This document shows positions 131-53,289 of a DNA stretch of 64,000 nt, piece by piece. The DNA is from Macrostomum lignano (taxonomy: Eukaryota). The notes under the pieces are model-generated. The model did no database searches, was not told the DNA's origin, and worked only from the letters and a program-made list of their open reading frames with translations. The position numbers and the translations under genes were made by a program. How positions within the stretch are numbered: the first letter of the stretch is position 1; the number at the start of each line of letters is the position of its first letter. Location of the stretch: positions 1 through 64,000 of the forward strand of contig NIVC01003877.1 of assembly GCA_002269645.1 (NCBI GenBank). The letters run 5' to 3'.

Positions 131-1716
131 CAGTAGGAATGCCAAGCCATTTTTCCGCCCGTCGAACTACCAAGAGGGGAAAATTCCCCCCCCCCTGACA
201 ATTTTTTTTGCTGCGCCGGAACGGAGCAACGCAGGCACACGAATTTCAAGAACACGGGCTAACTTTTTGTTGCGCACCTTCTCAAACAAGAATCAAGTCG
301 CCAGCCCTTCGGACCGTCGAGATATTCGACGATTCTGCCAGAAGGTCGGATTTTTCCCATAAGTGCTATAGTGTATTCAGTACACCCCTGTGCGCCAATT
401 AGCACTGCGCCTCAGTGCAGCCTTGTCAAGTCTCCAAATTTCATCAGCACGTCGAACACATGTGTCTGCATCAGCTCTGACTTCGTTGGTTACTGGCCTT
501 CACCCAAGTGGAGCTTCTGGACCCTCAACAGCTGTGGCACCAGGTGACTATGGACACCCTGATGCGGATTTCTCTAGTTTCGCCGATCAAGCCTCGACAG
601 TGGGCAAGAATCAACCGCCAGACATTCTCAGCTAGTCTCTCAAGCATTCCGTCATCATCCCGACGCCGTCGGCACCTTCAACAGGTGGCACCGGGAGTAA
701 GGACACCTGAGCGTGATTTTTCATCATGCTCTTAACATTTCTGAAGCTCTCAAAATTTTTCAAGCACGGAAATTTCTATACTTAAGCTTGAACTTATGTT
801 GCTGTATATTTATATTATTATTACACATACTTTTATGCATACGAGCTACATACATATTTTATTCGAAAAGCTGTTTAGTTTATTCAACTATAATATTGAA
901 CCCAATTTTTATGCAGAAAGGGTTATGCTTTTAAGAAGCCAGTAAATTCAGTCGGTTTTTTCATTTTTAATGATTCAGAAATGTTAAGAGCATGATGAAA
1001 AATCACGCTCAGGTGTCCTTACTCCCCTGGTGCCACCTGTTGAAGGTGCCGACGGCGTCGGGGTGATGGCTGAATGCTTGACTGACTTGCTGAGGATGTT
1101 CAGTAGTTGAGGTTTGCCCATTATTGAAGCTTGATAAGAAAAACCTGACATATTTGCAACAGGGATGTCCATAGTCACCTGGTGTAATCTGTTGAAGGAG
1201 CCGACGGCGTCGGGATGATGACGGAATGCTTGACTGACTAGCTGAGAATGTCTGGCGGTTGATTCTTGCCCACTGTCGAGGCTTGATCGGCGAAACTAGA
1301 GAAATCCGCATCAGGGTGTCCATAGTCACCTGGTGCCACAGCTGTTGAGGGTCCAGAAGCTCCACTTGGGTGAAGGCTAGTGACCAACGAAGTCAGAACT
1401 GAGGCAGACACATGTGTTCGACGTGCTGATGAAATTTGGAGACTTGGCAAGGCTGCACTGAGGCGCAGTGCTAATTGGCGCACAGGGGTGTACTGAATAC
1501 ACTGGCGCTTATGGGAAAAATCCGACCTTCTGGCAGAATCGTCGAATATCTCGACAGTCCGAAGGGCTGGCGACTTGATTCTTGTTTGAGAAGGTGCGCA
1601 ACAAAAAGTTAGCCCGTGTTCTTGAAATTCGTGTGCCTGCGTTGCTCCGTTCCGGCGCAGCGAAAAAAATTGTCAGGGGGGGGGAATTTCGCCCCCCCCT
1701 CTTGGTAGTTCTACTG
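131..1716. mobile_element. Foldback-type non-autonomous DNA element with very long inverted arms
   Basis: Left arm 164-745 is the near-identical reverse complement of right arm 974-1711, around a 228-bp AT-rich spacer. Outer ends are CAGTAG(131)...CTACTG(1716). The right arm carries an extra ~150-bp diverged internal repeat unit. No clean TSD. Confidence 0.8.
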
Positions 1717-1815: not shown

Positions 1816-2807
1816 AAGTCAGGCATACATTTATAAAATTAGTAAAACAAACACTTTCTACTTTCAGTTAAGTAGCAAAGAATGCATAACGCTATTTTAT
1901 GGCTGAAATGACTGGTAAGTTTATCTATGGAAGCCAAGCTTGCAGGCGTAAACAACTTGCTAATTAGTTCAGCAATAATGTACTCGTACATTAGTGAGTC
2001 AGCTGAAATGTACATGGTTGGAATTTTAGGCGGTAATTCTGAGAAAGGCAATAAATTTGGGGCGGGGCGGGGTGGTGTGGAAAGGCGCCGTTAGAGGGTT
2101 AAAGCTGAGTGGTAAGAGCCAATAAATGAGCCTTGGCTTTAAAAGTACATTAAAATGCTTGATTAAAATTTACTACTGAACTGAAAATATGTCTTGTAAT
2201 GTAAGTGTTATGTCTTGTAATCCTGTGCTTTATGTTTGCGCTGCAATACGAGTAGCTTCGTGCCGACGACTTGCTTAGAGAGAAGACACACTCGGCGGAA
2301 GGCAATAAGGTCGCAGTCATAGACATAAATGAATAGGGCAATAACAGGGAAACGCTAATCCGCAAAGTACGGGTATGAGCTACAAGTATTAGGTGCATTT
2401 ACAATACACTTCAGTTTGTTTACACGCAAATGTGCTAAATGGCCCATCCGCATGTAGTTATTCCAATATCTGTGGTTTCGAGTGAATAAACACAATAAAT
2501 CCGTATACGAGTATTGAGATATTGGACTTTAGATTGTATTGCCAATAGTTTAGGAAGATATCAATGTAATATTCAAAAAATATAATCTAGCCAGCTAAAT
2601 TAATTTTCTTATCTTTATTAGCTGTTAGTAGATACGAACCAAGTCAAAAATGAGTAAAAATCACAAAACTATATTCTTCAGCGATCAACGCACTTATAAA
2701 AAATCAGACATTTTATGACTACAAAACACGCATAAAGATGGTCTACAAAGCTGGCATATATGGCTCATAACACACGCCTTTCAGTGAAACAGATTTGAAA
2801 TAGCTAC

Positions 2808-4009
2808 TCAATTTAAGTTAACAATACCGCCTGCATCCTCGAAGTTGTTGTGCACCCAAACAAGGTCATCTCCCTGATACCCTGTGTGGCTGATGTTGAT
2901 CAACTTCGTCAGATTGTTCATGCTCCTCGGGCTGTAGCGCCTCTCAGCGAAGAAGCTGATCATGAACTGGCGCTCCTCCTCGCTCATGTGCTTCCTCAGC
3001 CACTCCATGTGCACCACGGGAATCGTGAAGGTGTCGAAAAGCTTCTGCGCGCTCTTGAAGAACTCGCCTTCGCCTCCTTCGATGTCGACCTTCAACACGA
3101 CCAGCTTCGTGTCGATGAGCGGCACGATGGAGTCCGCGGTGGCCGACATCACCGGGATCGTGTCGACGACGGCCCTGCCGAACTTGGTGGCGCCGCCCAT
3201 ATTGCAGTCCTCCGGGAAGTTCAGGTACATGAGCGACACCTGCCTGCTGACGAAGTTCCACAGCAGCTGCAGCTTGTGAGGCGAATTGGCCGCCTCGGCT
3301 GACAGCTTGATTCGAATCAGGTTGCGGATGTTCGCGTCCAGCGCGATGACGGGCACTCCGAGATCGAGGACCGACAGGCTGAACACGCCGATGTTCGAGC
3401 CGACGTCCACGAAGGTGACGGGCGACTTGGCGGCCAGCTTGCGAATGATTCGCTGCATGGTGCGGACGTTCCGCTCTTCGAAGATGTGCGAGCCGTGAAT
3501 TGTAGCCGAGATGTAGTCGGTACTGGAGTAGACGAAGCTGGTGACGTTTTTCTGGGTGAGGGGGCTTCTGATGTATGTCTGAAGGCTTCCAGCTCTGACG
3601 CCTTCAATGAGCACCTGCGGCAGGTGCTGCTTGAGTCGGCACAGTGGAAACGCGCTGTCCACGATGGTGTAGGCGGCGACACCTTCGCAGATGCTCTCGC
3701 TGATGGACTTGTGCAGGAAGTTGACGCCGCGGAGCTCTCGATAGGCGTCACACATTTTTCTGGCAGCGGTCTGTGAATGACCGGCGGGATGCTCGATTGG
3801 TAGGATTTCTGCAGTGCCGGTTGGTTCAAGGCGTTGGCCTCAGATTCTGTCCTGCGATATTCGCGTACTGCACTCTGTGGTTTTGCTGCCACGGCTTTGT
3901 CTTGTGACGAACTGAGTCTGCTGCTGCGGCTTCTGTGATATATTTCACTCAGAATCCAGATAAACATCGCCATCAATAAAATGACAAGTGCAGTTTTCGA
4001 ACAATTCAT
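2808..4009 (-). CDS. FkbM-family (Methyltransf_21) SAM-dependent methyltransferase with N-terminal signal anchor, copy A; 1-nt frameshift near 3755 (sequencing error or pseudogene)
   Basis: Motifs FVDVGSNIGVFSL and LKVDIEGGE. The N-terminus MNCSKTALVILLMAMFIWILSEIY (ATG at 4009) lies in a different frame from ORF 2808-3755. The A-run has 5 A's here versus 6 (GAA AAA ATG) in the intact paralog. Confidence 0.8.
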
Positions 4010-4719
4010 TGTTCCTGCTCGTACCTGCAATGTAAGTGATTTTTTGATTTACTTTTTATTGGCATTTATATATTCAGATTGTGAACTGCATAAGCTAAGC
4101 GTCTTCTGACAGTTGGCTCATCGTCATGTGTATGCATGCAGGTGCAAATTGTTAATCGAACAGCTTACCTGATAAATGAACTGATAAATTCCGCTGTCTA
4201 TAATTTTGTTACTTAATCTCAGCATATGATTTACCTGCGTTGCCTGTTATATATGAGTTCTATAACTATGAAACTAAACTGTTTGCAATGGTTGCACAGC
4301 TGATGGTAGAATTAGCGAAAACTGAAGGCTCCAAGGCCACAAAACAAATACCGAGAACTTACTGTTTGTTTTGTCAATTCAAAGGGTCATCGACATTGAG
4401 CGAACGTCATTAAGTAAATCAAGCAGGTAAACACTCAATAAGCAGTGTTGTTTGCACTCGACCGGATTGCTTCTCAATAGACTTAGCTCTGAAGTCAATT
4501 GTGCTGCTCATCATTAACGTCAGCTTGGGTCAGCTTGGGTCAGCTTGGGTCCAGAAATTTTACCTTTCAAACGGCTGGTTTAAGTTGATCAACAAGAATA
4601 TATGGTTAGATGTTAAATGATTTAATTTTAGCTGCTAAAAATAGTTCAATTATTTACATTGATAATTAGAGGCCGGAGGCTGTGTGCACCCTGGCGCACT
4701 TTAAGCGACATTGTCACAC

Positions 4720-4970
4720 AACCGGCTAGAGGCATTGCTGCCCATTCCGCCGACTCCCCTGAGCAGGCACACAAGCGCGCGGATACGTACGCAGTCATAC
4801 GCGCAGGCACACACTCACACAGGAGTGTACAGCGGCCCTAAATTTATTTATCGTTAGGCATGTACACTTCACTGTGCCTTGGGGTTGGCCCTCAAGGCCG
4901 TTAATTGCACGAGCGGAGCCCAGCCGAGATTCCAATTTAGCCACAAATTAATTTGACTGCACTTGGAAAC
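4720..4970 (-). mobile_element. SINE body (same family as 40-130/1717-1815; 3' part also at ~7770-7890)
   Basis: Reverse-complement match to the interrupted SINE. The segment GCCCATTCCGC..CCCCTGAGCA..ACAAGCGCGC..TCATACGC..GTGTACA recurs at ~7780-7880. Confidence 0.55.
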
Positions 4971-5047
4971 AATGTTCGTACGGCAACAAATGGACAGTAG
5001 TGCTTGGGAAGTATTGGCCTAGTATTGAATGAGTTGTCCTGGATGCT

Positions 5048-5175
5048 CACCCAGTGATTCAGACACGGTAACGGTGGCGGTAAGGAGGCGGTAACGGAGG
5101 AGCAAATTATCGAGAAGATCAGCGCCAGTGCTTGGGTGAGCAACGTGGTAATCGCCCCCAAGATTCGCCTCACGG
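5048..5175 (+). mobile_element. Degenerate Ty3/gypsy reverse-transcriptase fragment
   Basis: Translates with breaks to HPVIQ...KEAVTEE...QIIEKISASAWVSNVVIAPK-IRL, matching the gypsy RT N-terminal pattern (GIIExVxxSxWVSxxVxxxKxxGxIRLCVD). Confidence 0.45.
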
Positions 5176-5227
5176 ATGTAAATCGCACGAACCCCCCCCC
5201 ACAACTGCATGGCCAATTCTCCTGAAC

Positions 5228-5294
5228 ACATGGAATCGAACCAGAGGCCGTGGGGCGTGAGTCAGACGCGTATACCACTGAGCTGCTCTGCACC
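5228..5294 (-). mobile_element. tRNA-derived SINE head (Pol III A/B boxes)
   Basis: Minus strand reads GGTGCAGAGCAGCTCAGTGGTATACGCG...GGTTCGATTCCA. The A and B boxes are clear but the anticodon stem does not pair, so this is not called a tRNA gene. Confidence 0.55.
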
Positions 5295-6094
5295 CGATCT
5301 TTGTATCGTGTTTCCTGAGGCTGTCTTCGGTTTTCTGAATGGTTGATACTTATAGTTCTCTAATTCCAGAGTAAAAATATTCTGTCCAGTGCAGTTTTTA
5401 CCTTGCTTAATTTACTCAATGATGTTTACTAAGTGACCCATTAGATCGACAGAGCAATGCGTCCAATACTGAATTTATTTGCTTTTAAGACTCTTCAAAT
5501 ACATTCTACAGCTTCGTGACTCCCGAGGCTTCGACTCTTCTTCCTCACTTTCTTCTCTTGTCTTTCTAGAGACCTCAGCAATAAGAGTTATTTAACACGG
5601 ACTGTAGGAGAGAGCGCTCAAATACACCGCAGGGAGACGTGCTCAGGGAGACGGGCCAATGATTCATAACGATAGACAACGGACCGTACTCGACAAAGTT
5701 TAACAGCTCGATTCCATAAACTACCGGTAGCTATAGGCAAAGTTTTGATTTAAGAAAGCGAAAAAATTGATTCCAATAAAGGTAAGCTGCTTGAGTACAG
5801 TACATGCACATGTGTTGATTTTTAACTTCCGCCCCTTGGTGCTTGGGTGCCGGTGCTGATGAGAAAAAGCACCTTTCTGCTGTTACTGTCTGTTTAGTGC
5901 ATTTTTACAGACAGACTTTGTAAGTGCTCCTTCGAACAGAATGCCTGCTTGCTTAGTTTGCAATCTAGAAGCTCAGATATTGAGATAGCTCGTATTGTGA
6001 GAATTTAGTGCTGAATTCTTTGGAGCACACCTGACGGCAGTCCGGTCGAAATGCAAATTAAAACTGAATAAAAAACACATAAATTGCAGGAACA

Positions 6095-7291
6095 ATGAAG
6101 TGGTCGAAAACTGCACTTGTTATTTTATTGACAGCTATATCCGTCTGGCTTGTGAGTGAAGTATACCACAGCAGCCGCAGCCTCAATCCGTCACAAGACA
6201 AAGCCGTGGCAGCAAAACCAAAGAGTGCAGTACGCGAATATCGCAGGACAGAATCTGAGTCCAACGCCTTGAACCAACCGGCACTGCAGAAATCCTACCA
6301 ATCGAGCATCCCGCCGGTCATTCACAGACCGCTGCCAGAAAAAATGTGTGACGCCTATCGAGAGCTCCGCAGCGTCAACTTCCTGCACAAGTCCATCAGC
6401 GAGAGCATCTGCGAAGGCGCCGCCGCCTACACCATCGTGGACAGCGCGTTTCCACTTTGTCGACTCAAGCAGCACCTGCCGCACGTGCTCATCGAAGGCG
6501 TCAGAGCTGGAAGCCTTCAGACATACATCAGAAGCCCCCTCACCCAGAGAAACGTTGTCAGTTTCGTGTACTCAAGTCCTGACCTGATCTCGACCTTAAT
6601 TCATGGCTCGCATGTCTTCGAGGAGCGGAACGTCCGCATCATGCAGCAAATCATTCGCAAGCTGGCCGCCAAGTCGCCCGTCACCTTCGTGGACGTCGGC
6701 TCGAACATCGGCGTGTTCAGCCTGCCGGTCCTCGATCTCGGAGTGCCCGTCATCGCGCTGGATGCGAACATCCGCAACCTGATTCGAATCAAGCTGTCAG
6801 CCGAGGCGGCCAATTCGCCTCACAAGCTGCAGCTGCTGTGGAACTTCGTCAGCAGGCAGGTGTCGCTCATGTACCTGAACTTCCCGAAGGACTGCAACAT
6901 GGGCGGCGCCACCAAGTTCGGCAGGGCCGTCGTCGACACGATCCCGGTGATGTCGGCCACCGCGGACTCCATCGTGCCGCTCATCGACACGAAGCTGGTC
7001 GTGTTGAAGGTCGACATCGAAGGAGGCGAAGGCGAGTTCTTCAAGAGCGCGCAGAAGCTGTTCGACAGCGTCACGATTCCCGTGGTGCACATGGAGTGGC
7101 TGAGGAAGCACATGAGCGAGGAGGAGCGCCAGTTCATGATCAGCTTCTTCGCTGAGAGGCGCTACAGCCCGAGGACTATGGTCCATCCGACCAGAGTTAT
7201 CGACATTAAGGATATAGGCTTTGAGGATTATAACCTTGTTTGGGTTCACAAGGATTTCACAGATGCAAGCTGGCTATTTGACTCAGATTGA
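6095..7291 (+). CDS. FkbM-family (Methyltransf_21) SAM-dependent methyltransferase, predicted type II membrane protein, copy B (398 aa, intronless)
   Basis: Intact ORF. A short basic N-terminus plus hydrophobic anchor (KTALVILLTAISVWLVSEVY) and a low-complexity stem precede the FkbM motifs DVGSNIG, ALDAN and KVDIEGGE. Confidence 0.9.
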   Translation: MKWSKTALVILLTAISVWLVSEVYHSSRSLNPSQDKAVAAKPKSAVREYRRTESESNALNQPALQKSYQSSIPPVIHRPLPEKMCDAYRELRSVNFLHKSISESICEGAAAYTIVDSAFPLCRLKQHLPHVLIEGVRAGSLQTYIRSPLTQRNVVSFVYSSPDLISTLIHGSHVFEERNVRIMQQIIRKLAAKSPVTFVDVGSNIGVFSLPVLDLGVPVIALDANIRNLIRIKLSAEAANSPHKLQLLWNFVSRQVSLMYLNFPKDCNMGGATKFGRAVVDTIPVMSATADSIVPLIDTKLVVLKVDIEGGEGEFFKSAQKLFDSVTIPVVHMEWLRKHMSEEERQFMISFFAERRYSPRTMVHPTRVIDIKDIGFEDYNLVWVHKDFTDASWLFDSD

Positions 7292-7912
7292 GCTGGTACA
7301 GAACTTAGCAAGTGTTAAAGGCAAACTGTGATTCACAATTCTAGATTTTGCTAGAAAAAGTTGCAGTGTGTATTGACCATCAATCTTTAACTTTTGATGA
7401 CTTAGTTGGTTGGTCGTTAGCTAATGTCGTTAGTTAATCTAATGTAAGCGTCTGCATAGATCTCAGTTATCGTCTGCTGTTGAAGTTTTCAAAATCAAAG
7501 GCAAGTTCTACAAACTGTGTAGTCTTCGCTTTCTTTAGCTAACAACTCGTTGGCTATGAAGTAAGATAGTTCCGAACCGAAGTGGCCATGTGAGTTGATC
7601 GAGTCTTTGTAAACTACTCTGTTTAACATTATCTGAAAAGATGCTATCCTTGATGGAAGCTGATAGATGAAGAAGTTACCTGCATGGCGGCCCGATTTTG
7701 GTGATGTTCTGTACCAATGGCAACCGCTGCTTCTGTTGAAATTTCCTGTACACCTGCTGCAAAGCTGTATTTACGACCTCGCCCATTCCGCTGACCCCTG
7801 AGCACATATATGTACATGTACAAGCGCGCCAATACTGTTCGCAAGCACGCACTCATACGCACGCTCAGACAGGGTGTACACAAGGACGACTTAAGTATAA
7901 GGACGGGAAGCC

Positions 7913-15416: not shown

Positions 15417-38787
<23,371 letters not shown>

Positions 38788-50600: not shown

Positions 50601-53289
50601 GCTGACTGAAAACTCAAAGTTAGCAATCTGCATTACTTTTTTCATGCAAAGTGCTACTTTAAATGTATATTATTAAACTTCTTTTCAAGGCAGAAATGAC
50701 TAGGTGCGTGAAAACCAAGCATTTCACCCCTCACTGAAAGGGTGCGGACTCATTCGGTCATTCGACTTGACTTGCTCTGGCTGCCGATCTACCTGCCGAT
50801 CTATCTGCCGATCTACCTGCCGATCAATTTACAGATTTATCTACCGATCTATCTATTGATCTATCTGCCGATCTATCTGCCAATCTATCTACTGATCTGT
50901 CTACTGATCTATCTGCTGATCTATCTGCCGATCTATCTGCCGATCTATCTACTGATCTATCTGCCGATCTATCTACCAATAAATCCACCCTCAAAATTGC
51001 GTAACTCGGCTCGCTATCCAAATCAGAGTATCACCCAACAATTTGCACAGCTGTAAAAAATAAAAATCAAGCATGGACTTGAGCAGAGGTGAGCAGGCAT
51101 TTCTGAAGAGAAGACGAAAAATCAGCCCAGTGGATGCATATATGTATAGGCAGATACTCGACCTGCAGTCTGAAGCAGTGAGAGAGCAGGAAGGAAGTTG
51201 GGGGAATTATATACTTTCTGGGATGGGATTTTCGAATTCTATCGAATTCCCACGCTGTAGAGGCTGCTGCCGTCTGCACAGCTGATAGAAGCCAACGGAC
51301 TGTGAAAACCGACGGCAGCTGCAACGGATGTCTAATAGACCAGCTAACTAGGGAATTCCCGGCCGCCTAGCAACCCCATTCGAATGCGGCTCTCAGACTG
51401 AGACCTTGTGCTTGTGGAATAACCCACCACTTAATCCCGACAGCGATGCCAACCCTGCAGAAATTGCTGACTGCCTCTCTCTGCCTCTCTGCCTCCCCCT
51501 CTGCCTCTCTGCCTCCCCCTCTGCCTCTCTGCCTCCCCTCTGCCTCTCTGCCTCCCCCTCTGCCTCTCTGCCTCCCCTCTGCCTCTCTGCCTCCCCCTCT
51601 GCCTCCCTGCCCCCTCTGCCTCCCTGCCTTCCCCTCTGCCTCCCTGCCTTCCCCTCTGCCTTCCGCCTCCCCTCTGCCTCCCTGCCTTCCCCTCTGCCTC
51701 CCTGCCTCCCCTCTGCCTCTCTGCCCCCCTCTGTCTCCCCCTCTGCCTCTGCCTTCCTCTCTGCCTCTCTGCCCCCCTCTGTCTCCCCCTCTGCCTCTCT
51801 GCCTTCCTCTCTGCCTCCCCTCTGCCTCTCTGCCTCTCTGCCTCCCCTTCTGCCTCTCTGCCTCTCTGCCTCCCCTCTGCCTCTCTGCCCCCCTCTGTCT
51901 CCCCCTCTGCCTCTCTGCCTCCCCTCTGCCTCTCTGCCCCCCCTCTGTCTCCCCCTCTGCCTCTCTGCCCTCCCCTCTGTCTCTCTGCCTTCCCCTCTGC
52001 CTCCCTGCCTTCCCCTCTGCCTCCCTGCCTCCCCCTCTGCCTCCCTGCCTCCCCTCTGCCTCTCTGCCCCCCTCTGTCTCCCCCCTCTGCCTCTGCCTTC
52101 TCTCTGCCTCTCTGCCTGCCTCTCTGCCTCCCCTCTGCCTCTCTGCCTCTCTGCCTCCCCTTCTGCCTCTCTGCCTCTCTGCCTCTCTGCCTCCCCTCTG
52201 CCTCTCTGCCCCCCCTCTGTCTCCCCCTCTGCCTCTCTGCCTCCCCTCTGCCTCTCTGCCCCCCTCTGTCTCCCCCTCTGCCTCTCTGCCCTCCCCTCTG
52301 TCTCTCTGCCTTCCCCTCTGCCTCCCTGCCTTCCCCTCTGCCTCCCTGCCTCCCCCTCTGCCTCTCTGCCTCCCCCTCTGCCTCTCTGCCTCCCCTTCTG
52401 CCTCTCTGCCTCCCCTCTGCCTCTCTGCCTCCCCTTCTGCCTCCCTGCCTCCCCCTCTGCCTCCCTGCCTCCCCCTCTGCCTCTCTGCCTCCTCCTCTGC
52501 CTCCCTGCCTCCCGCTCTGCCTCTCTGCCTCCCCCTCTGCCTCTCTGCCTCCCCCTCTGCCTCCCCCTCTACCTCCCCCTGTGCCTCCCCTCTGTCATCT
52601 ATCAATATCCAAATATCCCAATCTTCCAGGTAAGTCCCCAGACAAGCCACATCTCGCAGACTCACCTGCGGCAGACTGCACAGCAGTGAGGCTCCGACCG
52701 AAACGGCCAGAAGCAGTCGCGCTCTCCGCCCAGCCGTCGTGATGCTCAAAGGCCTGCTCACAGCCAAATACCTGTCTATCGCTATCGAAGTTACAATAAA
52801 TGACGACAAATACAAGCCGAAAGCCGATATGACTCGATAGAATTTGCACAGCCATCTGCCTCCGTACCATGTGTGCGTGAGCATAGTAATTAGCTCAACT
52901 AGCGGAGTAATTAGTACGGCCAAATCAGCCAATGCCAGGTGCATGATAAAATAGTTCACTTTGCTCCATCGGCGCCGGTTTAGGTACAGGTTAATGGCCA
53001 CAATCAGATTACCAGCCAGAGAGAGTAGGACAATTAGCAACAGACAGGTGAAAGCTGCGGTTTTGAATGGCAGGTACTGAATGCGACAGCTCTGCGACTG
53101 GTTCACCTCAGGGACTGTGAATGACAACACTTGGCCGACTTGATCCGGGTGGAACTGGTAGTCCATGGTCAGGTTGTGGTGCAGAAAGTTGTCTGTCAGG
53201 TGAGTCCAGATGTCAAAACAGCGAGGCTGATTGGCGTCCTCCTGACGGCTGGGTCGGAGACTCGTCACCAGCGACAGACTGCCGGTCAT
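41657..53289 (-). CDS. Class A neuropeptide GPCR, GnRH/AKH/vasopressin receptor superfamily, 6 exons, ~504 aa
   Basis: Exons 53289-52666, 46475-46256, 45499-45347, 44350-44272, 42392-42313 and 42015-41657, with consistent phases. Motifs GN (TM1), [62 protein letters not shown] and [11 protein letters not shown]. Confidence 0.88.
42045..42210. repeat. ~36-bp tandem repeat in GPCR intron 5
   Basis: GTGACTGTGTGATGAGGAGTGGCTGTGTGTTGCTG units. Confidence 0.8.
42432..44180. repeat. 10-bp minisatellite (TCCCATCTCA)n with variant units
   Basis: A ~1.75-kb array filling GPCR intron 4. Confidence 0.97.
44608..45340. repeat. Purine-rich arrays: 15-bp (GAGAGGACAGGACA)-type at 44608-44882 and 10-bp (GACAGGAGCA)n at ~45090-45340
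   Basis: Directly visible. Confidence 0.92.
45598..46190. repeat. 32-bp minisatellite (AGACAGGTAATAAAACTTCAATCCCCACCTTC)n
   Basis: About 18 units filling GPCR intron 2. Confidence 0.95.
46530..47387. repeat. Two adjacent 20-bp arrays: (AGAGAGGAGAGGACAGGGGC)n and (GGTGCCCCACAGCCCTCCAA)n
   Basis: Directly visible. Confidence 0.93.
48042..48425. repeat. 83-bp tandem repeat, ~4.5 copies
   Basis: GTCTGCCTCCTAGAATGTACATTG recurs with an 83-bp period. Confidence 0.9.
49010..49240. repeat. 12-bp minisatellite (CTCACTCATGAT)n
   Basis: Directly visible. Confidence 0.92.
50780..50980. repeat. 12-bp (GATCTATCTGCC)n array
   Basis: Same family as 53308-53865. Confidence 0.88.
51470..52590. repeat. Pyrimidine-rich (CTCTGCCTCCCC)-type array in GPCR intron 1
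   Basis: Directly visible; it is the source of the spurious GR/AE-rich ORF extension. Confidence 0.92.

What the first reader, a model, noticed from the sequence alone, without database searches (positions are those of the whole stretch)
2808..7291. Membrane-anchored FkbM methyltransferases: candidate Golgi glycan O-methyltransferases
Seen: both paralogs have the type II architecture of Golgi glycan-modifying enzymes, namely a short basic tail, one hydrophobic anchor, a stem and a C-terminal FkbM SAM-dependent domain. Established: FkbM-family enzymes are O-methyltransferases best known from bacteria, and O-methylated hexoses occur on N-glycans of planarians, gastropods and nematodes. To my knowledge the animal enzymes responsible are largely unidentified. 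Inference: these genes could encode that luminal glycan-methylating activity.
Basis: partly seen in the sequence, partly recalled or inferred. Interest (0 to 1): 0.7.

Follow-up and report, generated by a model that had tools for sequence, protein, structure and literature searches.

The report
Membrane-anchored FkbM methyltransferase gene pair, flatworm
Two head-to-head copies of a flatworm (Macrostomum-type) gene encode a membrane-anchored FkbM methyltransferase, one copy intact and one frameshifted as assembled; they are reasonable but unproven candidates for the still-unidentified animal enzymes that methylate sugars on glycoproteins.

Summary
Copy B (+, 6095-7291) is an intact single-exon 398-aa ORF. 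It has a 5-residue tail (MKWSK), a 16-residue hydrophobic anchor, a disordered stem and a well-folded FkbM-family SAM methyltransferase domain (Pfam PF05050; AlphaFold pLDDT 86.6; best fold matches are viral FkbM enzymes). Copy A (-, 2808-4009) has the same parts, but as assembled a 1-nt deletion in an A-run (A5 against A6) puts the anchor and the catalytic domain in different frames. Copy A still evolves under purifying selection, so the frameshift is either very recent or a homopolymer error.

The closest proteins are uncharacterised Macrostomum lignano paralogs, then bivalve proteins. About 84% of relatives with a complete N-terminus carry the same basic tail plus anchor, so a lumenal catalytic domain is a family-wide feature.

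Nothing here addresses the substrate. There are no glycosylation genes nearby, no fusions to glycosyltransferases, and I found no Macrostomum glycome study. The papers I read confirm that animal glycan O-methyltransferases are still unidentified.

Verdict: a solid anchored FkbM methyltransferase. The Golgi glycan O-methyltransferase reading is plausible, testable and unproven.

The parts
6095..7291 (+). Copy B: intact single-exon CDS, 398 aa plus stop
   Evidence: ORF list; Pfam PF05050 at 35.7 bits; AlphaFold model with pLDDT 86.6. GC is 0.556 and GC3 0.744 against 0.41-0.44 in the flanks.
6095..6109 (+). Copy B short cytosolic tail MKWSK (net charge +2)
   Evidence: Translation; flank-charge analysis.
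6110..6157 (+). Copy B hydrophobic signal-anchor, residues 6-21 (TALVILLTAISVWLVS)
   Evidence: Kyte-Doolittle maximum 1.89 over 19 residues. It is a 16-residue uncharged run with mean hydropathy 2.28. The model places a helix at 3-29.
6158..6346 (+). Copy B stem, residues 22-84: low complexity, variable between paralogs
   Evidence: pLDDT is below 50 for residues 32-55 and 60-71. The paralogs do not align in this region. dN/dS is about 0.94 for codons 1-83.
6347..7288 (+). Copy B globular domain, residues 85-398: a Cys-containing N-terminal subdomain (85-160) followed by the FkbM class I SAM methyltransferase core
   Evidence: pLDDT is mostly above 90. The best Foldseek matches in BFVD are FkbM methyltransferases, E 7.7e-13 and TMt 0.73-0.81. 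TIGR01444 covers residues 197-324.
6689..6712 (+). SAM-binding motif I, VDVGSNIG (residues 199-206)
   Evidence: D200, G202 and G206 are invariant and N204 is at least 90% conserved in the 40-sequence alignment A2. Positions were checked.
7007..7030 (+). Family signature K-x-D-x-E-G-x-E, here KVDIEGGE (residues 305-312)
   Evidence: K305 is invariant; D307, E309 and E312 are at least 90% conserved in A2. Positions were checked.
3756..4009 (-). Copy A tail (MNCSK), anchor and stem, in the frame that starts at ATG 4009
   Evidence: Alignment to copy B; hydropathy maximum 2.13; tblastn of copy B residues 1-84 hits 4009-3752 at 79% identity.
3755..3759 (-). A5 homopolymer (A6 in copy B at 6339-6344): the 1-nt deletion that separates the anchor frame from the catalytic frame
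   Evidence: Pairwise alignment gap; sequence read directly.
2808..3755 (-). Copy A catalytic-domain ORF, 315 aa, starting at the Met equivalent to M84 of copy B, with every conserved motif residue retained
   Evidence: Pfam PF05050 at 37.2 bits. None of the 56 amino-acid differences falls on a conserved column. Branch-specific changes are 8 synonymous and 7 non-synonymous.
4010..6094 (.). 2.1-kb unique spacer between the divergently oriented copies; it probably holds both promoters
   Evidence: There is no similarity between the copies beyond about 10 nt upstream of each ATG. GC is 0.435. No Rfam or tRNA hit.

Best explanation
The locus is a recent inverted (head-to-head) duplication of an intronless flatworm gene. 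It belongs to a multi-paralog Macrostomum family whose wider relatives include bivalve proteins.

Copy B most likely makes a single-pass type II membrane protein of the secretory pathway. It has five cytosolic residues, a short (about 16-17 residue) signal-anchor of Golgi-like length, a flexible stem, and a lumenal FkbM-family class I methyltransferase domain. That domain would use S-adenosylmethionine imported into the lumen.

The most probable acceptors are hydroxyl groups of sugars on glycoconjugates: N- or O-glycans, glycolipids or secreted polysaccharide.

Copy A is the same gene with a 1-nt homopolymer deletion between stem and catalytic domain. This is either a very young pseudogene or an assembly error.

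Shown: the gene structure, the frameshift, family and fold membership, conservation of the SAM-binding and signature motifs, purifying selection, and family-wide conservation of the anchor. Inferred: membrane topology, Golgi residence, catalytic activity, O-methylation, and a glycan acceptor.
For: Family and fold:
- Pfam PF05050 above threshold for both copies.
- TIGR01444 at 37.5 bits, aligned to positions 1-132 of 143.
- The exhaustive HMMER search found 820 relatives with E <= 1e-3.
- Conserved columns are D200/G202/N204/G206 (motif I), N250, N268/G270, K305/D307/E309/E312 and M333/E334.
- The AlphaFold model has pLDDT 86.6 and pTM 0.80, with helix 3-29, disorder at 32-71 and a globular domain at 85-398.
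- The best structural matches are FkbM methyltransferases of giant viruses and phages, E 7.7e-13 to 1e-10 and TMt up to 0.81. One of them sits inside a 1202-aa protein annotated as a capsular polysaccharide synthesis protein.

Topology:
- Copy B has a basic tail and a 16-residue uncharged hydrophobic run.
- Of 116 relatives with a complete N-terminus, 98 carry such an anchor.
- Mean flank charge is +2.5 on the N-side against +0.8 on the C-side, with the N-side larger in 70 of 93.
- Four Cys (85, 106, 122, 267) are conserved in the Macrostomum paralogs.

Selection:
- Core dN/dS is 0.33.
- With an M. lignano paralog as outgroup, branch-specific changes are 8 synonymous/7 non-synonymous for copy A and 7/10 for copy B.

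Host origin:
- The closest proteins are M. lignano proteins on contigs of 80-900 kb.
- The window also carries an RH1+WD40_2 gene, a kinase, a GPCR and retroelements.

Substrate plausibility:
- Named relatives outside Macrostomum are bivalves, and Mytilus edulis N-glycans are 4-O-methylated (PMC8699351).
- The C. elegans glycan methyltransferases are unknown, while a putative SAM transporter mutant (samt-1) alters methylated glycans (PMC7614267, PMC6422873).
- FkbM genes have been linked to glycan methylation in Ostreococcus and in Geobacillus flagellin glycosylation islands.
- Two relatives also score above threshold on the Vibrio RfbT model.
Against: - There is no direct evidence for Golgi residence, activity or acceptor.
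- The window contains no glycosylation genes.
- None of ten long relatives is fused to a glycosyltransferase domain.
- Copy B has no N-glycosylation sequon; copy A has three.
- The hydrophobic segment is short enough to be a cleaved signal peptide instead of an anchor.
- The founding FkbM enzyme methylates a macrolide, not a sugar, so the family does not dictate the acceptor.
- TIGR01444 falls 0.2 bits below its curated cut-off.
- PDB matches are only generic class I methyltransferases.
- I found no Macrostomum glycome data, so it is unknown whether this animal has methylated glycans at all.
Confidence: 0.55

Rival explanations
1. The protein is a lumenal, anchored FkbM methyltransferase, but its acceptor is not a glycan. 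It could be a lipid, a secreted small molecule (natural-product-like, as for the founding enzyme FkbM) or a protein side chain in the secretory pathway.
For: The family is named after a macrolide O-methyltransferase. No glycosylation genes lie nearby and no relative is fused to a glycosyltransferase. The Macrostomum clade has its own Cys-containing N-terminal subdomain (residues 85-160) that most relatives lack; outside Macrostomum it aligns only in P0009, a metagenome protein. It could specify an unusual acceptor.
Against: The known lumenal SAM-dependent methylations in eukaryotes are overwhelmingly of carbohydrates (established knowledge; plant Golgi polysaccharide methylation, bioRxiv 10.1101/2021.07.06.451061). 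The named relatives come from molluscs (bivalves), a phylum in which methylated glycans are documented. Many paralogs and tandem multi-domain relatives fit the multiple position-specific methylations seen on glycans.
Confidence: 0.2
2. The N-terminal hydrophobic segment is a cleaved signal peptide, and the protein is secreted as a soluble enzyme or binding protein rather than retained as a type II Golgi protein.
For: The hydrophobic run is only 16 residues in copy B and 14-15 in M. lignano P0002 and P0003, which is within signal-peptide range. No topology or cleavage predictor was available.
Against: The family median is 17 residues, and 52 of 93 relatives have at least 17 uncharged residues preceded by a basic tail, which is typical of signal anchors. 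The model gives a continuous helix at 3-29. An extracellular SAM-dependent enzyme would lack its cofactor (inference). Golgi enzymes are often shed by stem cleavage, so secretion would not exclude a Golgi function.
Confidence: 0.1
3. The pair is decaying or non-catalytic: copy A is a pseudogene and copy B is a redundant paralog or pseudoenzyme with no methyltransferase activity.
For: Copy A is frameshifted as assembled. The Macrostomum genome carries many paralogs. Copy B's C-terminal 38 codons are highly diverged, with dS 0.90.
Against: All conserved SAM-motif and signature residues are intact in both copies. Both branches show a deficit of non-synonymous changes. Copy A's 315-codon catalytic ORF has no further lesion, so the frameshift is recent or artefactual.
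Confidence: 0.05
4. The genes are bacterial contamination or a very recent horizontal transfer rather than genuine flatworm genes.
For: FkbM enzymes are best known from bacteria. The genes are intronless and richer in GC than their flanks.
Against: They are embedded between eukaryotic repeats and genes on the same contig. The M. lignano paralogs lie on contigs of 80-900 kb next to a TMEM106 gene. Other coding exons in the window are similarly GC-rich. The relatives carry eukaryote-style signal anchors.
Confidence: 0.02

Closest known systems
Macrostomum lignano hypothetical proteins BOX15_Mlig026243g2, Mlig019506g3, Mlig003310g1 and Mlig009692g2 (UniProt: 'Methyltransferase FkbM domain-containing protein')
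   Same: They share 47-81% protein identity with copy B, and the core of the gene encoding Mlig026243g2 is 91% identical at the DNA level. They have the same tail-anchor-stem-domain layout and the same four Cys. The Mlig026243g2 gene is also a single exon.
   Different: They are not identical, and the exact copy B protein is absent from the collections. Tails, anchors and stems differ. All are uncharacterised.
FkbM of Streptomyces (31-O-methyltransferase of FK506/FK520), founder of Pfam PF05050 / TIGR01444
   Same: Same domain family by HMM, same SAM-dependent class I fold, and O-methylation chemistry.
   Different: FkbM is a soluble bacterial enzyme acting on a macrolide. The flatworm proteins add a signal anchor, a stem and a Cys-containing N-terminal subdomain. 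TIGR01444 scores 0.2 bits below its cut-off.
Bacterial sugar O-methyltransferases of the FkbM/RfbT group: rhizobial NoeI (2-O-methylation of Nod-factor fucose; my own knowledge that it is FkbM-family) and Vibrio cholerae RfbT (O-antigen methylation; Pfam PF05575)
   Same: These are FkbM-type domains that methylate a sugar hydroxyl on a glycoconjugate. Two relatives of the window protein (P0011, P0081) also exceed the PF05575 cut-off.
   Different: They are cytoplasmic bacterial enzymes. The window protein itself does not hit PF05575. The family assignment of NoeI was not tested here.
Giant-virus and phage FkbM methyltransferases; chlorovirus PBCV-1 A064R domain 3 (a validated N-glycan rhamnose 2-O-methyltransferase)
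   Same: The viral FkbM proteins are the best structural matches, with TMt 0.73-0.81. A064R-D3 shows that a class I SAM methyltransferase can methylate N-glycan sugars (PMC9614988).
   Different: The viral enzymes are soluble or fused to glycosyltransferases and act in the cytoplasm. Sequence identity is 12-20%. I did not test whether A064R-D3 is itself FkbM-type.
Plant Golgi type II polysaccharide O-methyltransferases (for example the glucuronoxylan methyltransferase DUF579 family and QUA2-like proteins), served by Golgi SAM transporters
   Same: They work the same way as proposed here: a short tail, a signal anchor, a stem and a lumenal SAM-dependent methyltransferase acting on carbohydrate. 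SAM must be imported into the Golgi (bioRxiv 10.1101/2021.07.06.451061; enzyme families from my own knowledge).
   Different: The methyltransferase families are unrelated, so this is an analogy of architecture only.

Membership tests
FkbM-family methyltransferase (Pfam PF05050 Methyltransf_21 / TIGR01444) | Score above the curated Pfam gathering threshold | tested here: met
   35.7 bits (copy B) and 37.2 bits (copy A catalytic ORF) against a cut-off of 22.7. The best stretch covers model positions 71-172 of 173.
FkbM-family methyltransferase (Pfam PF05050 Methyltransf_21 / TIGR01444) | Score above the curated NCBIfam TIGR01444 cut-off | tested here: inconclusive
   37.5 bits against a cut-off of 37.7, E 2.9e-9, aligned over model positions 1-132 of 143.
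FkbM-family methyltransferase (Pfam PF05050 Methyltransf_21 / TIGR01444) | Glycine-rich SAM-binding motif I (D-x-G-x-N-x-G) and the K-x-D-x-E-G-x-E signature | tested here: met
   VDVGSNIG at residues 199-206 and KVDIEGGE at 305-312. D200, G202, G206 and K305 are invariant; N204, D307, E309 and E312 are at least 90% conserved in 40 relatives. All are unchanged in copy A.
FkbM-family methyltransferase (Pfam PF05050 Methyltransf_21 / TIGR01444) | Class I (Rossmann-like) methyltransferase fold closest to FkbM proteins | tested here: met
   The model has pLDDT 86.6. The top BFVD matches are FkbM methyltransferases, E 7.7e-13 and TMt up to 0.81. PDB matches are generic class I methyltransferases.
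FkbM-family methyltransferase (Pfam PF05050 Methyltransf_21 / TIGR01444) | SAM-dependent O-methyl transfer activity | not testable with these tools
   Needs an assay with recombinant protein.
Type II Golgi glycan-modifying enzyme (architectural class) | Short, net-positive cytosolic N-terminal tail followed by a single hydrophobic signal anchor | tested here: met
   Copy B has MKWSK followed by 16 uncharged hydrophobic residues, with flank charge +2 against 0 and a model helix at 3-29. Of 116 relatives with a full N-terminus, 98 share this. In copy A the anchor is not in frame with the domain.
Type II Golgi glycan-modifying enzyme (architectural class) | Flexible stem between the anchor and a C-terminal globular catalytic domain | tested here: met
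   pLDDT is below 50 for residues 32-55 and 60-71 and above 90 for most of 90-398. The stem is hypervariable between paralogs.
Type II Golgi glycan-modifying enzyme (architectural class) | Marks of a lumenal domain: conserved Cys pairs and N-glycosylation sequons | tested here: inconclusive
   Four Cys are conserved in the Macrostomum paralogs, but I could not check disulfide geometry. Copy B has no sequon; copy A has three.
Type II Golgi glycan-modifying enzyme (architectural class) | Golgi localisation and an uncleaved anchor | not testable with these tools
   No topology or signal-peptide predictor was available, and there are no localisation data.
Animal glycan O-methyltransferase (functional class; no member characterised in the papers I read) | Methylates sugar hydroxyls of N-/O-glycans | not testable with these tools
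   The literature states that these enzymes are unidentified. No phrase search found a characterised animal enzyme.
Animal glycan O-methyltransferase (functional class; no member characterised in the papers I read) | Genomic or domain association with glycosylation machinery | tested here: not met
   The neighbours are retroelements, an RH1/WD40_2 gene, a kinase and a GPCR. The M. lignano paralog's neighbour is TMEM106. The long relatives are tandem FkbM domains only.
Animal glycan O-methyltransferase (functional class; no member characterised in the papers I read) | Occurrence in taxa that make methylated glycans | tested here: inconclusive
   The named relatives are Macrostomum and bivalves. 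Mytilus has 4-O-methylated N-glycans and planarians have methylated N-glycans. I found no Macrostomum glycome, and most relatives carry no taxon label.

The most novel reading that the evidence does not exclude
The anchored FkbM family seen here is present in many paralogs in Macrostomum and in bivalves, sometimes as 2-5 tandem catalytic domains behind one anchor. It could be the long-sought set of animal Golgi glycan O-methyltransferases. Different paralogs or domains would supply the position- and residue-specific methylation (3-O/4-O-methyl Man, Gal, GlcNAc, Fuc) that characterises flatworm and mollusc glycans (and, if the family also occurs in nematodes, theirs) and that innate-immune lectins recognise.
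Probability: 0.4. Interest if true: 0.75.

Novelty: new variant of a known kind. Interest (0 to 1): 0.5.

Why it matters
O-methylated sugars are a hallmark of flatworm, mollusc and nematode glycans. They block glycosidases and are targets of fungal and animal defence lectins. The papers I read still state that the responsible animal methyltransferases are unknown (PMC7614267, PMC6422873, PMC5936828).

A conserved family of anchored, lumen-facing FkbM methyltransferases gives concrete candidates. Macrostomum lignano is a laboratory flatworm amenable to genetic manipulation (my own knowledge), so the question becomes directly testable.

If the idea fails, the family is still an uncharacterised lumenal methyltransferase class in animals. 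The genes themselves are ordinary members of an already catalogued domain family.

Tried and rejected
- **PDB sequence search, single sequence.** Only spurious hits such as acetolactate synthase, YfiR and MHC.
- **PDB sequence search, profile.** Only motif-I matches to generic methyltransferases, plus a weak hit to 2py6 (FkbM) at E 0.0045.
- **Foldseek against PDB.** Generic class I methyltransferases with TMq about 0.3, so no specific functional lead.
- **Profile search of the word-indexed protein collection.** It returned only 7 proteins, so it gave no taxonomic breadth.
- **Exact look-up of the copy B protein.** Not on record, so the species and assembly could not be fixed beyond Macrostomum-like. 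blastn against the two M. lignano loci matched only the coding core at 91%.
- **Third cluster look-up.** No names were returned.
- **Fusion to glycosyltransferase domains in long relatives.** None found.
- **Rfam and ARAGORN on the spacer.** Nothing found.
- **Second hydrophobic peak at residues 195-212.** Rejected as a transmembrane segment, because the model shows it is strand 1, helix A and strand 2 of the Rossmann fold.
- **Contamination.** Rejected on genomic context.
- **Programmed frameshifting at the A-run of copy A.** Considered, but nothing supports it, and copy B reads through the same site in frame.

Full report
**What is there.** The region holds two paralogous genes in divergent (head-to-head) orientation.
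- Copy B is an uninterrupted 398-codon ORF on the + strand, 6095-7291.
- Copy A is on the - strand, with its ATG at 4009 and its stop at 2808.
- The inverted repeat is confined to the coding sequence plus about 10 nt upstream of each ATG: arms 2807-4018 and 6086-7292, 84-97% identical by segment.
- The 2.1-kb spacer and the 3' flanks are unrelated.
- tblastn finds no further copy in the window.

**The frameshift.**
- Copy A differs from copy B by a 6-nt insertion in the stem and by one missing A in a homopolymer: A5 at 3755-3759 against A6 at 6339-6344.
- The deletion lies exactly between the stem and the catalytic domain.
- As assembled, the frame that starts at ATG 4009 encodes tail, anchor and stem and then 154 out-of-frame codons, stopping at 3317. 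The catalytic domain is a separate 315-codon ORF (2808-3755) that begins at the Met equivalent to M84.
- Copy A has no other lesion and keeps every conserved residue.
- With an M. lignano paralog as outgroup, copy A has 8 synonymous and 7 non-synonymous branch-specific changes in the core. Copy B has 7 and 10.
- Non-synonymous sites are about three times as numerous, so both branches are under purifying selection. The indel is therefore very recent or a homopolymer assembly error.

**Family and fold.**
- Both copies match Pfam PF05050 (Methyltransf_21, FkbM domain) above the gathering score.
- NCBIfam TIGR01444 aligns over residues 197-324 at 37.5 bits, 0.2 bits under its cut-off.
- An exhaustive HMMER search of 1.84 billion representatives found 820 relatives at E <= 1e-3 and 172 at E <= 1e-10.
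- In a 40-sequence alignment the invariant or nearly invariant columns are E176, D200/G202/N204/G206 (SAM motif I, VDVGSNIG), N250, N268/G270, K305/D307/E309/E312 (KVDIEGGE) and M333/E334.
- AlphaFold2 with that alignment gave a confident model: mean pLDDT 86.6, pTM 0.80. It has an N-terminal helix at 3-29, a disordered stretch at 32-71 and a compact alpha/beta domain at 85-398.
- Foldseek against predicted viral structures put FkbM methyltransferases of giant viruses and phages on top, with E 7.7e-13 to 1e-10 and TMt up to 0.81.
- Against the PDB, only generic class I methyltransferases matched, with low TM-scores. Sequence searches of the PDB were uninformative.
- Membership of the FkbM family is therefore well supported. 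Nothing here specifies the acceptor.

**Architecture.**
- Copy B begins MKWSK, followed by TALVILLTAISVWLVS, a 16-residue uncharged run with mean hydropathy 2.28. The N-side flank charge is +2 and the C-side flank charge is 0.
- The second hydropathy peak (195-212) is the first strand-helix-strand of the Rossmann fold, not a membrane segment.
- The layout is a property of the family. Among hits with a recognisable motif I at least 90 residues from the N-terminus, 98 of 116 have an N-terminal hydrophobic anchor.
- The median anchor starts at residue 10 and is 17 residues long. The mean flank charge is +2.5 on the N-side against +0.8 on the C-side.
- By the positive-inside rule this predicts N-in, C-out, which puts the catalytic domain in the lumen.
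- Four cysteines (85, 106, 122, 267) are conserved among the Macrostomum paralogs. This fits an oxidising compartment but was not checked structurally.
- Copy B has no N-glycosylation sequon; copy A has three.
- A cleaved signal peptide rather than a stable anchor cannot be excluded with the tools at hand. Either way the domain is extracytosolic.

**Organism and relatives.**
- The closest proteins are uncharacterised Macrostomum lignano proteins at 43-81% identity. All have their own basic tail, anchor and variable stem.
- The gene for the closest complete one is also a single exon. Its core is 91% identical in DNA to both window copies.
- The exact copy B protein is not on record. The window is therefore Macrostomum-like DNA, either an unannotated paralog or a sister species.
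- The next named relatives are bivalve proteins from Dreissena, Mytilus and Pinctada. Most other relatives come from unlabelled assemblies.
- Long relatives (up to 1456 aa) are 2-5 tandem FkbM domains, in several cases behind one N-terminal anchor, with no glycosyltransferase domain. Two of them also exceed the cut-off of the Vibrio RfbT O-antigen methyltransferase model.
- The rest of the window is ordinary flatworm genome: an RH1+WD40_2 (JIP3/4-like) multi-exon gene, a kinase, a rhodopsin-type GPCR, RT and RNase H retroelement ORFs and many microsatellites.
- Contamination is excluded. So is any local clustering with glycosylation genes.

**Evolution of the pair.**
- Divergence is mosaic. 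Codons 84-360 have dS 0.093 and dN/dS 0.33, whereas the last 38 codons have dS 0.90.
- Copy A's C-terminal tail resembles that of M. lignano P0002, while copy B's does not.
- This suggests gene conversion of the core between paralogs, or a chimeric origin of one copy.

**Interpretation.**
- The best-supported mechanism is a single-pass, lumen-facing, SAM-dependent O-methyltransferase of the secretory pathway.
- A glycan acceptor is the most likely reading, but it rests on indirect arguments:
  - The known lumenal methylations in eukaryotes are of carbohydrates.
  - FkbM-type enzymes methylate sugars in several bacterial systems, and FkbM genes have been proposed to do so in algae. A viral class I methyltransferase domain (A064R-D3, family not tested here) is a validated N-glycan methyltransferase.
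  - The named relatives occur in flatworms and bivalves, and planarian and Mytilus N-glycans carry methyl groups.
  - The field states that the animal enzymes are unknown, although a putative SAM transporter (samt-1) is linked to methylated glycans in C. elegans.
- Against it:
  - There is no context or fusion evidence.
  - I found no Macrostomum glycome.
  - The founding FkbM enzyme acts on a macrolide.
- My estimates are about 0.85 for an anchored or secretory-pathway FkbM methyltransferase, about 0.55 for a glycoconjugate acceptor, and about 0.3 for N-glycan hexoses specifically.

**Novelty.**
- The domain family is known, and the Macrostomum paralogs are already labelled as FkbM domain-containing proteins in public databases.
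- In the literature I could search, no anchored animal member has been characterised.
- C. elegans glycobiologists already list Golgi-type candidate methyltransferases by the same architectural criteria.
- I therefore rate it a new variant of a known kind, with moderate interest. It is a concrete, testable candidate for an open question, not a demonstrated discovery.

Noticed in passing
window 3755-3759 (- strand) versus 6339-6344 (+ strand): Copy A has an A5 run where copy B has A6. This frameshifts copy A between stem and catalytic domain. The rest of copy A is intact and under purifying selection, so the indel is either a very young pseudogenisation or a homopolymer assembly error.
   Followed up: yes
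window 2808-2921 and 7175-7291 (the last 38 codons of each copy): Divergence between the copies is mosaic: dS is 0.09 in the core but 0.90 in the C-terminal tail. Copy A's tail resembles M. lignano P0002 and copy B's does not. This suggests gene conversion of the core or a chimeric copy.
   Followed up: partly
window 6080-6094 and 4010-4030: Similarity between the copies starts only about 10 nt upstream of each ATG, right at a TTGCAG acceptor-like sequence (copy A has a short duplication, GCAGGTACGAGCAGG). It could be a spliced-leader or 5'-UTR intron acceptor. I did not test this.
   Followed up: no
window 176-1695: A large foldback structure lies upstream of copy A's 3' end. It has inverted-repeat arms at 176-366/1505-1695 and 370-695/1178-1503 (96% complementary) and a 151-nt tandem pair at 1014-1316. 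It is probably a foldback or MITE-like repeat.
   Followed up: no
window about 5195-5290 (- strand): A tRNA-like fragment with box A/B-like sequences (…GCTCAGTGGTATA…GGTTCGATTCC…) sits in the spacer between the two genes. Neither ARAGORN nor Rfam calls it, so it is possibly a SINE or a tRNA pseudogene. A (TCAGCTTGGG)x3 microsatellite lies at about 4522-4551.
   Followed up: partly
window 15417-15947 and 34738-36192 (+): These are exons of a JIP3/4-like gene (RH1 domain, then WD40_2 domain) spread over more than 20 kb. A reverse-transcriptase ORF (16011-17279) lies between these two exons.
   Followed up: partly
window 29678-31707 (-): Protein-kinase ORFs lie on the opposite strand, between the two JIP3/4-like exons (15417-15947 and 34738-36192). 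Only the 31072-31707 ORF hits Pkinase.
   Followed up: partly
window 51367-53289 (-): This is the first part of a rhodopsin-family GPCR (7tm_1, residues 93-214). It runs into a long GC-rich microsatellite that reads through as Arg/Gly/Glu repeats. The ORF is probably an exon plus repeat-rich intron rather than one protein.
   Followed up: partly
window 24245-24336 (-): ARAGORN calls a 92-nt tRNA-Thr(GGT). That is unusually long, so it may contain an intron or be a false call inside a repeat-rich stretch.
   Followed up: no
relatives P0007, P0011, P0012, P0081 (not in the window): Some relatives carry 2-5 tandem FkbM domains, and P0007, P0011 and P0012 have them behind a single N-terminal anchor (P0081 has none). 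This multi-catalytic layout would suit stepwise poly-methylation.
   Followed up: partly
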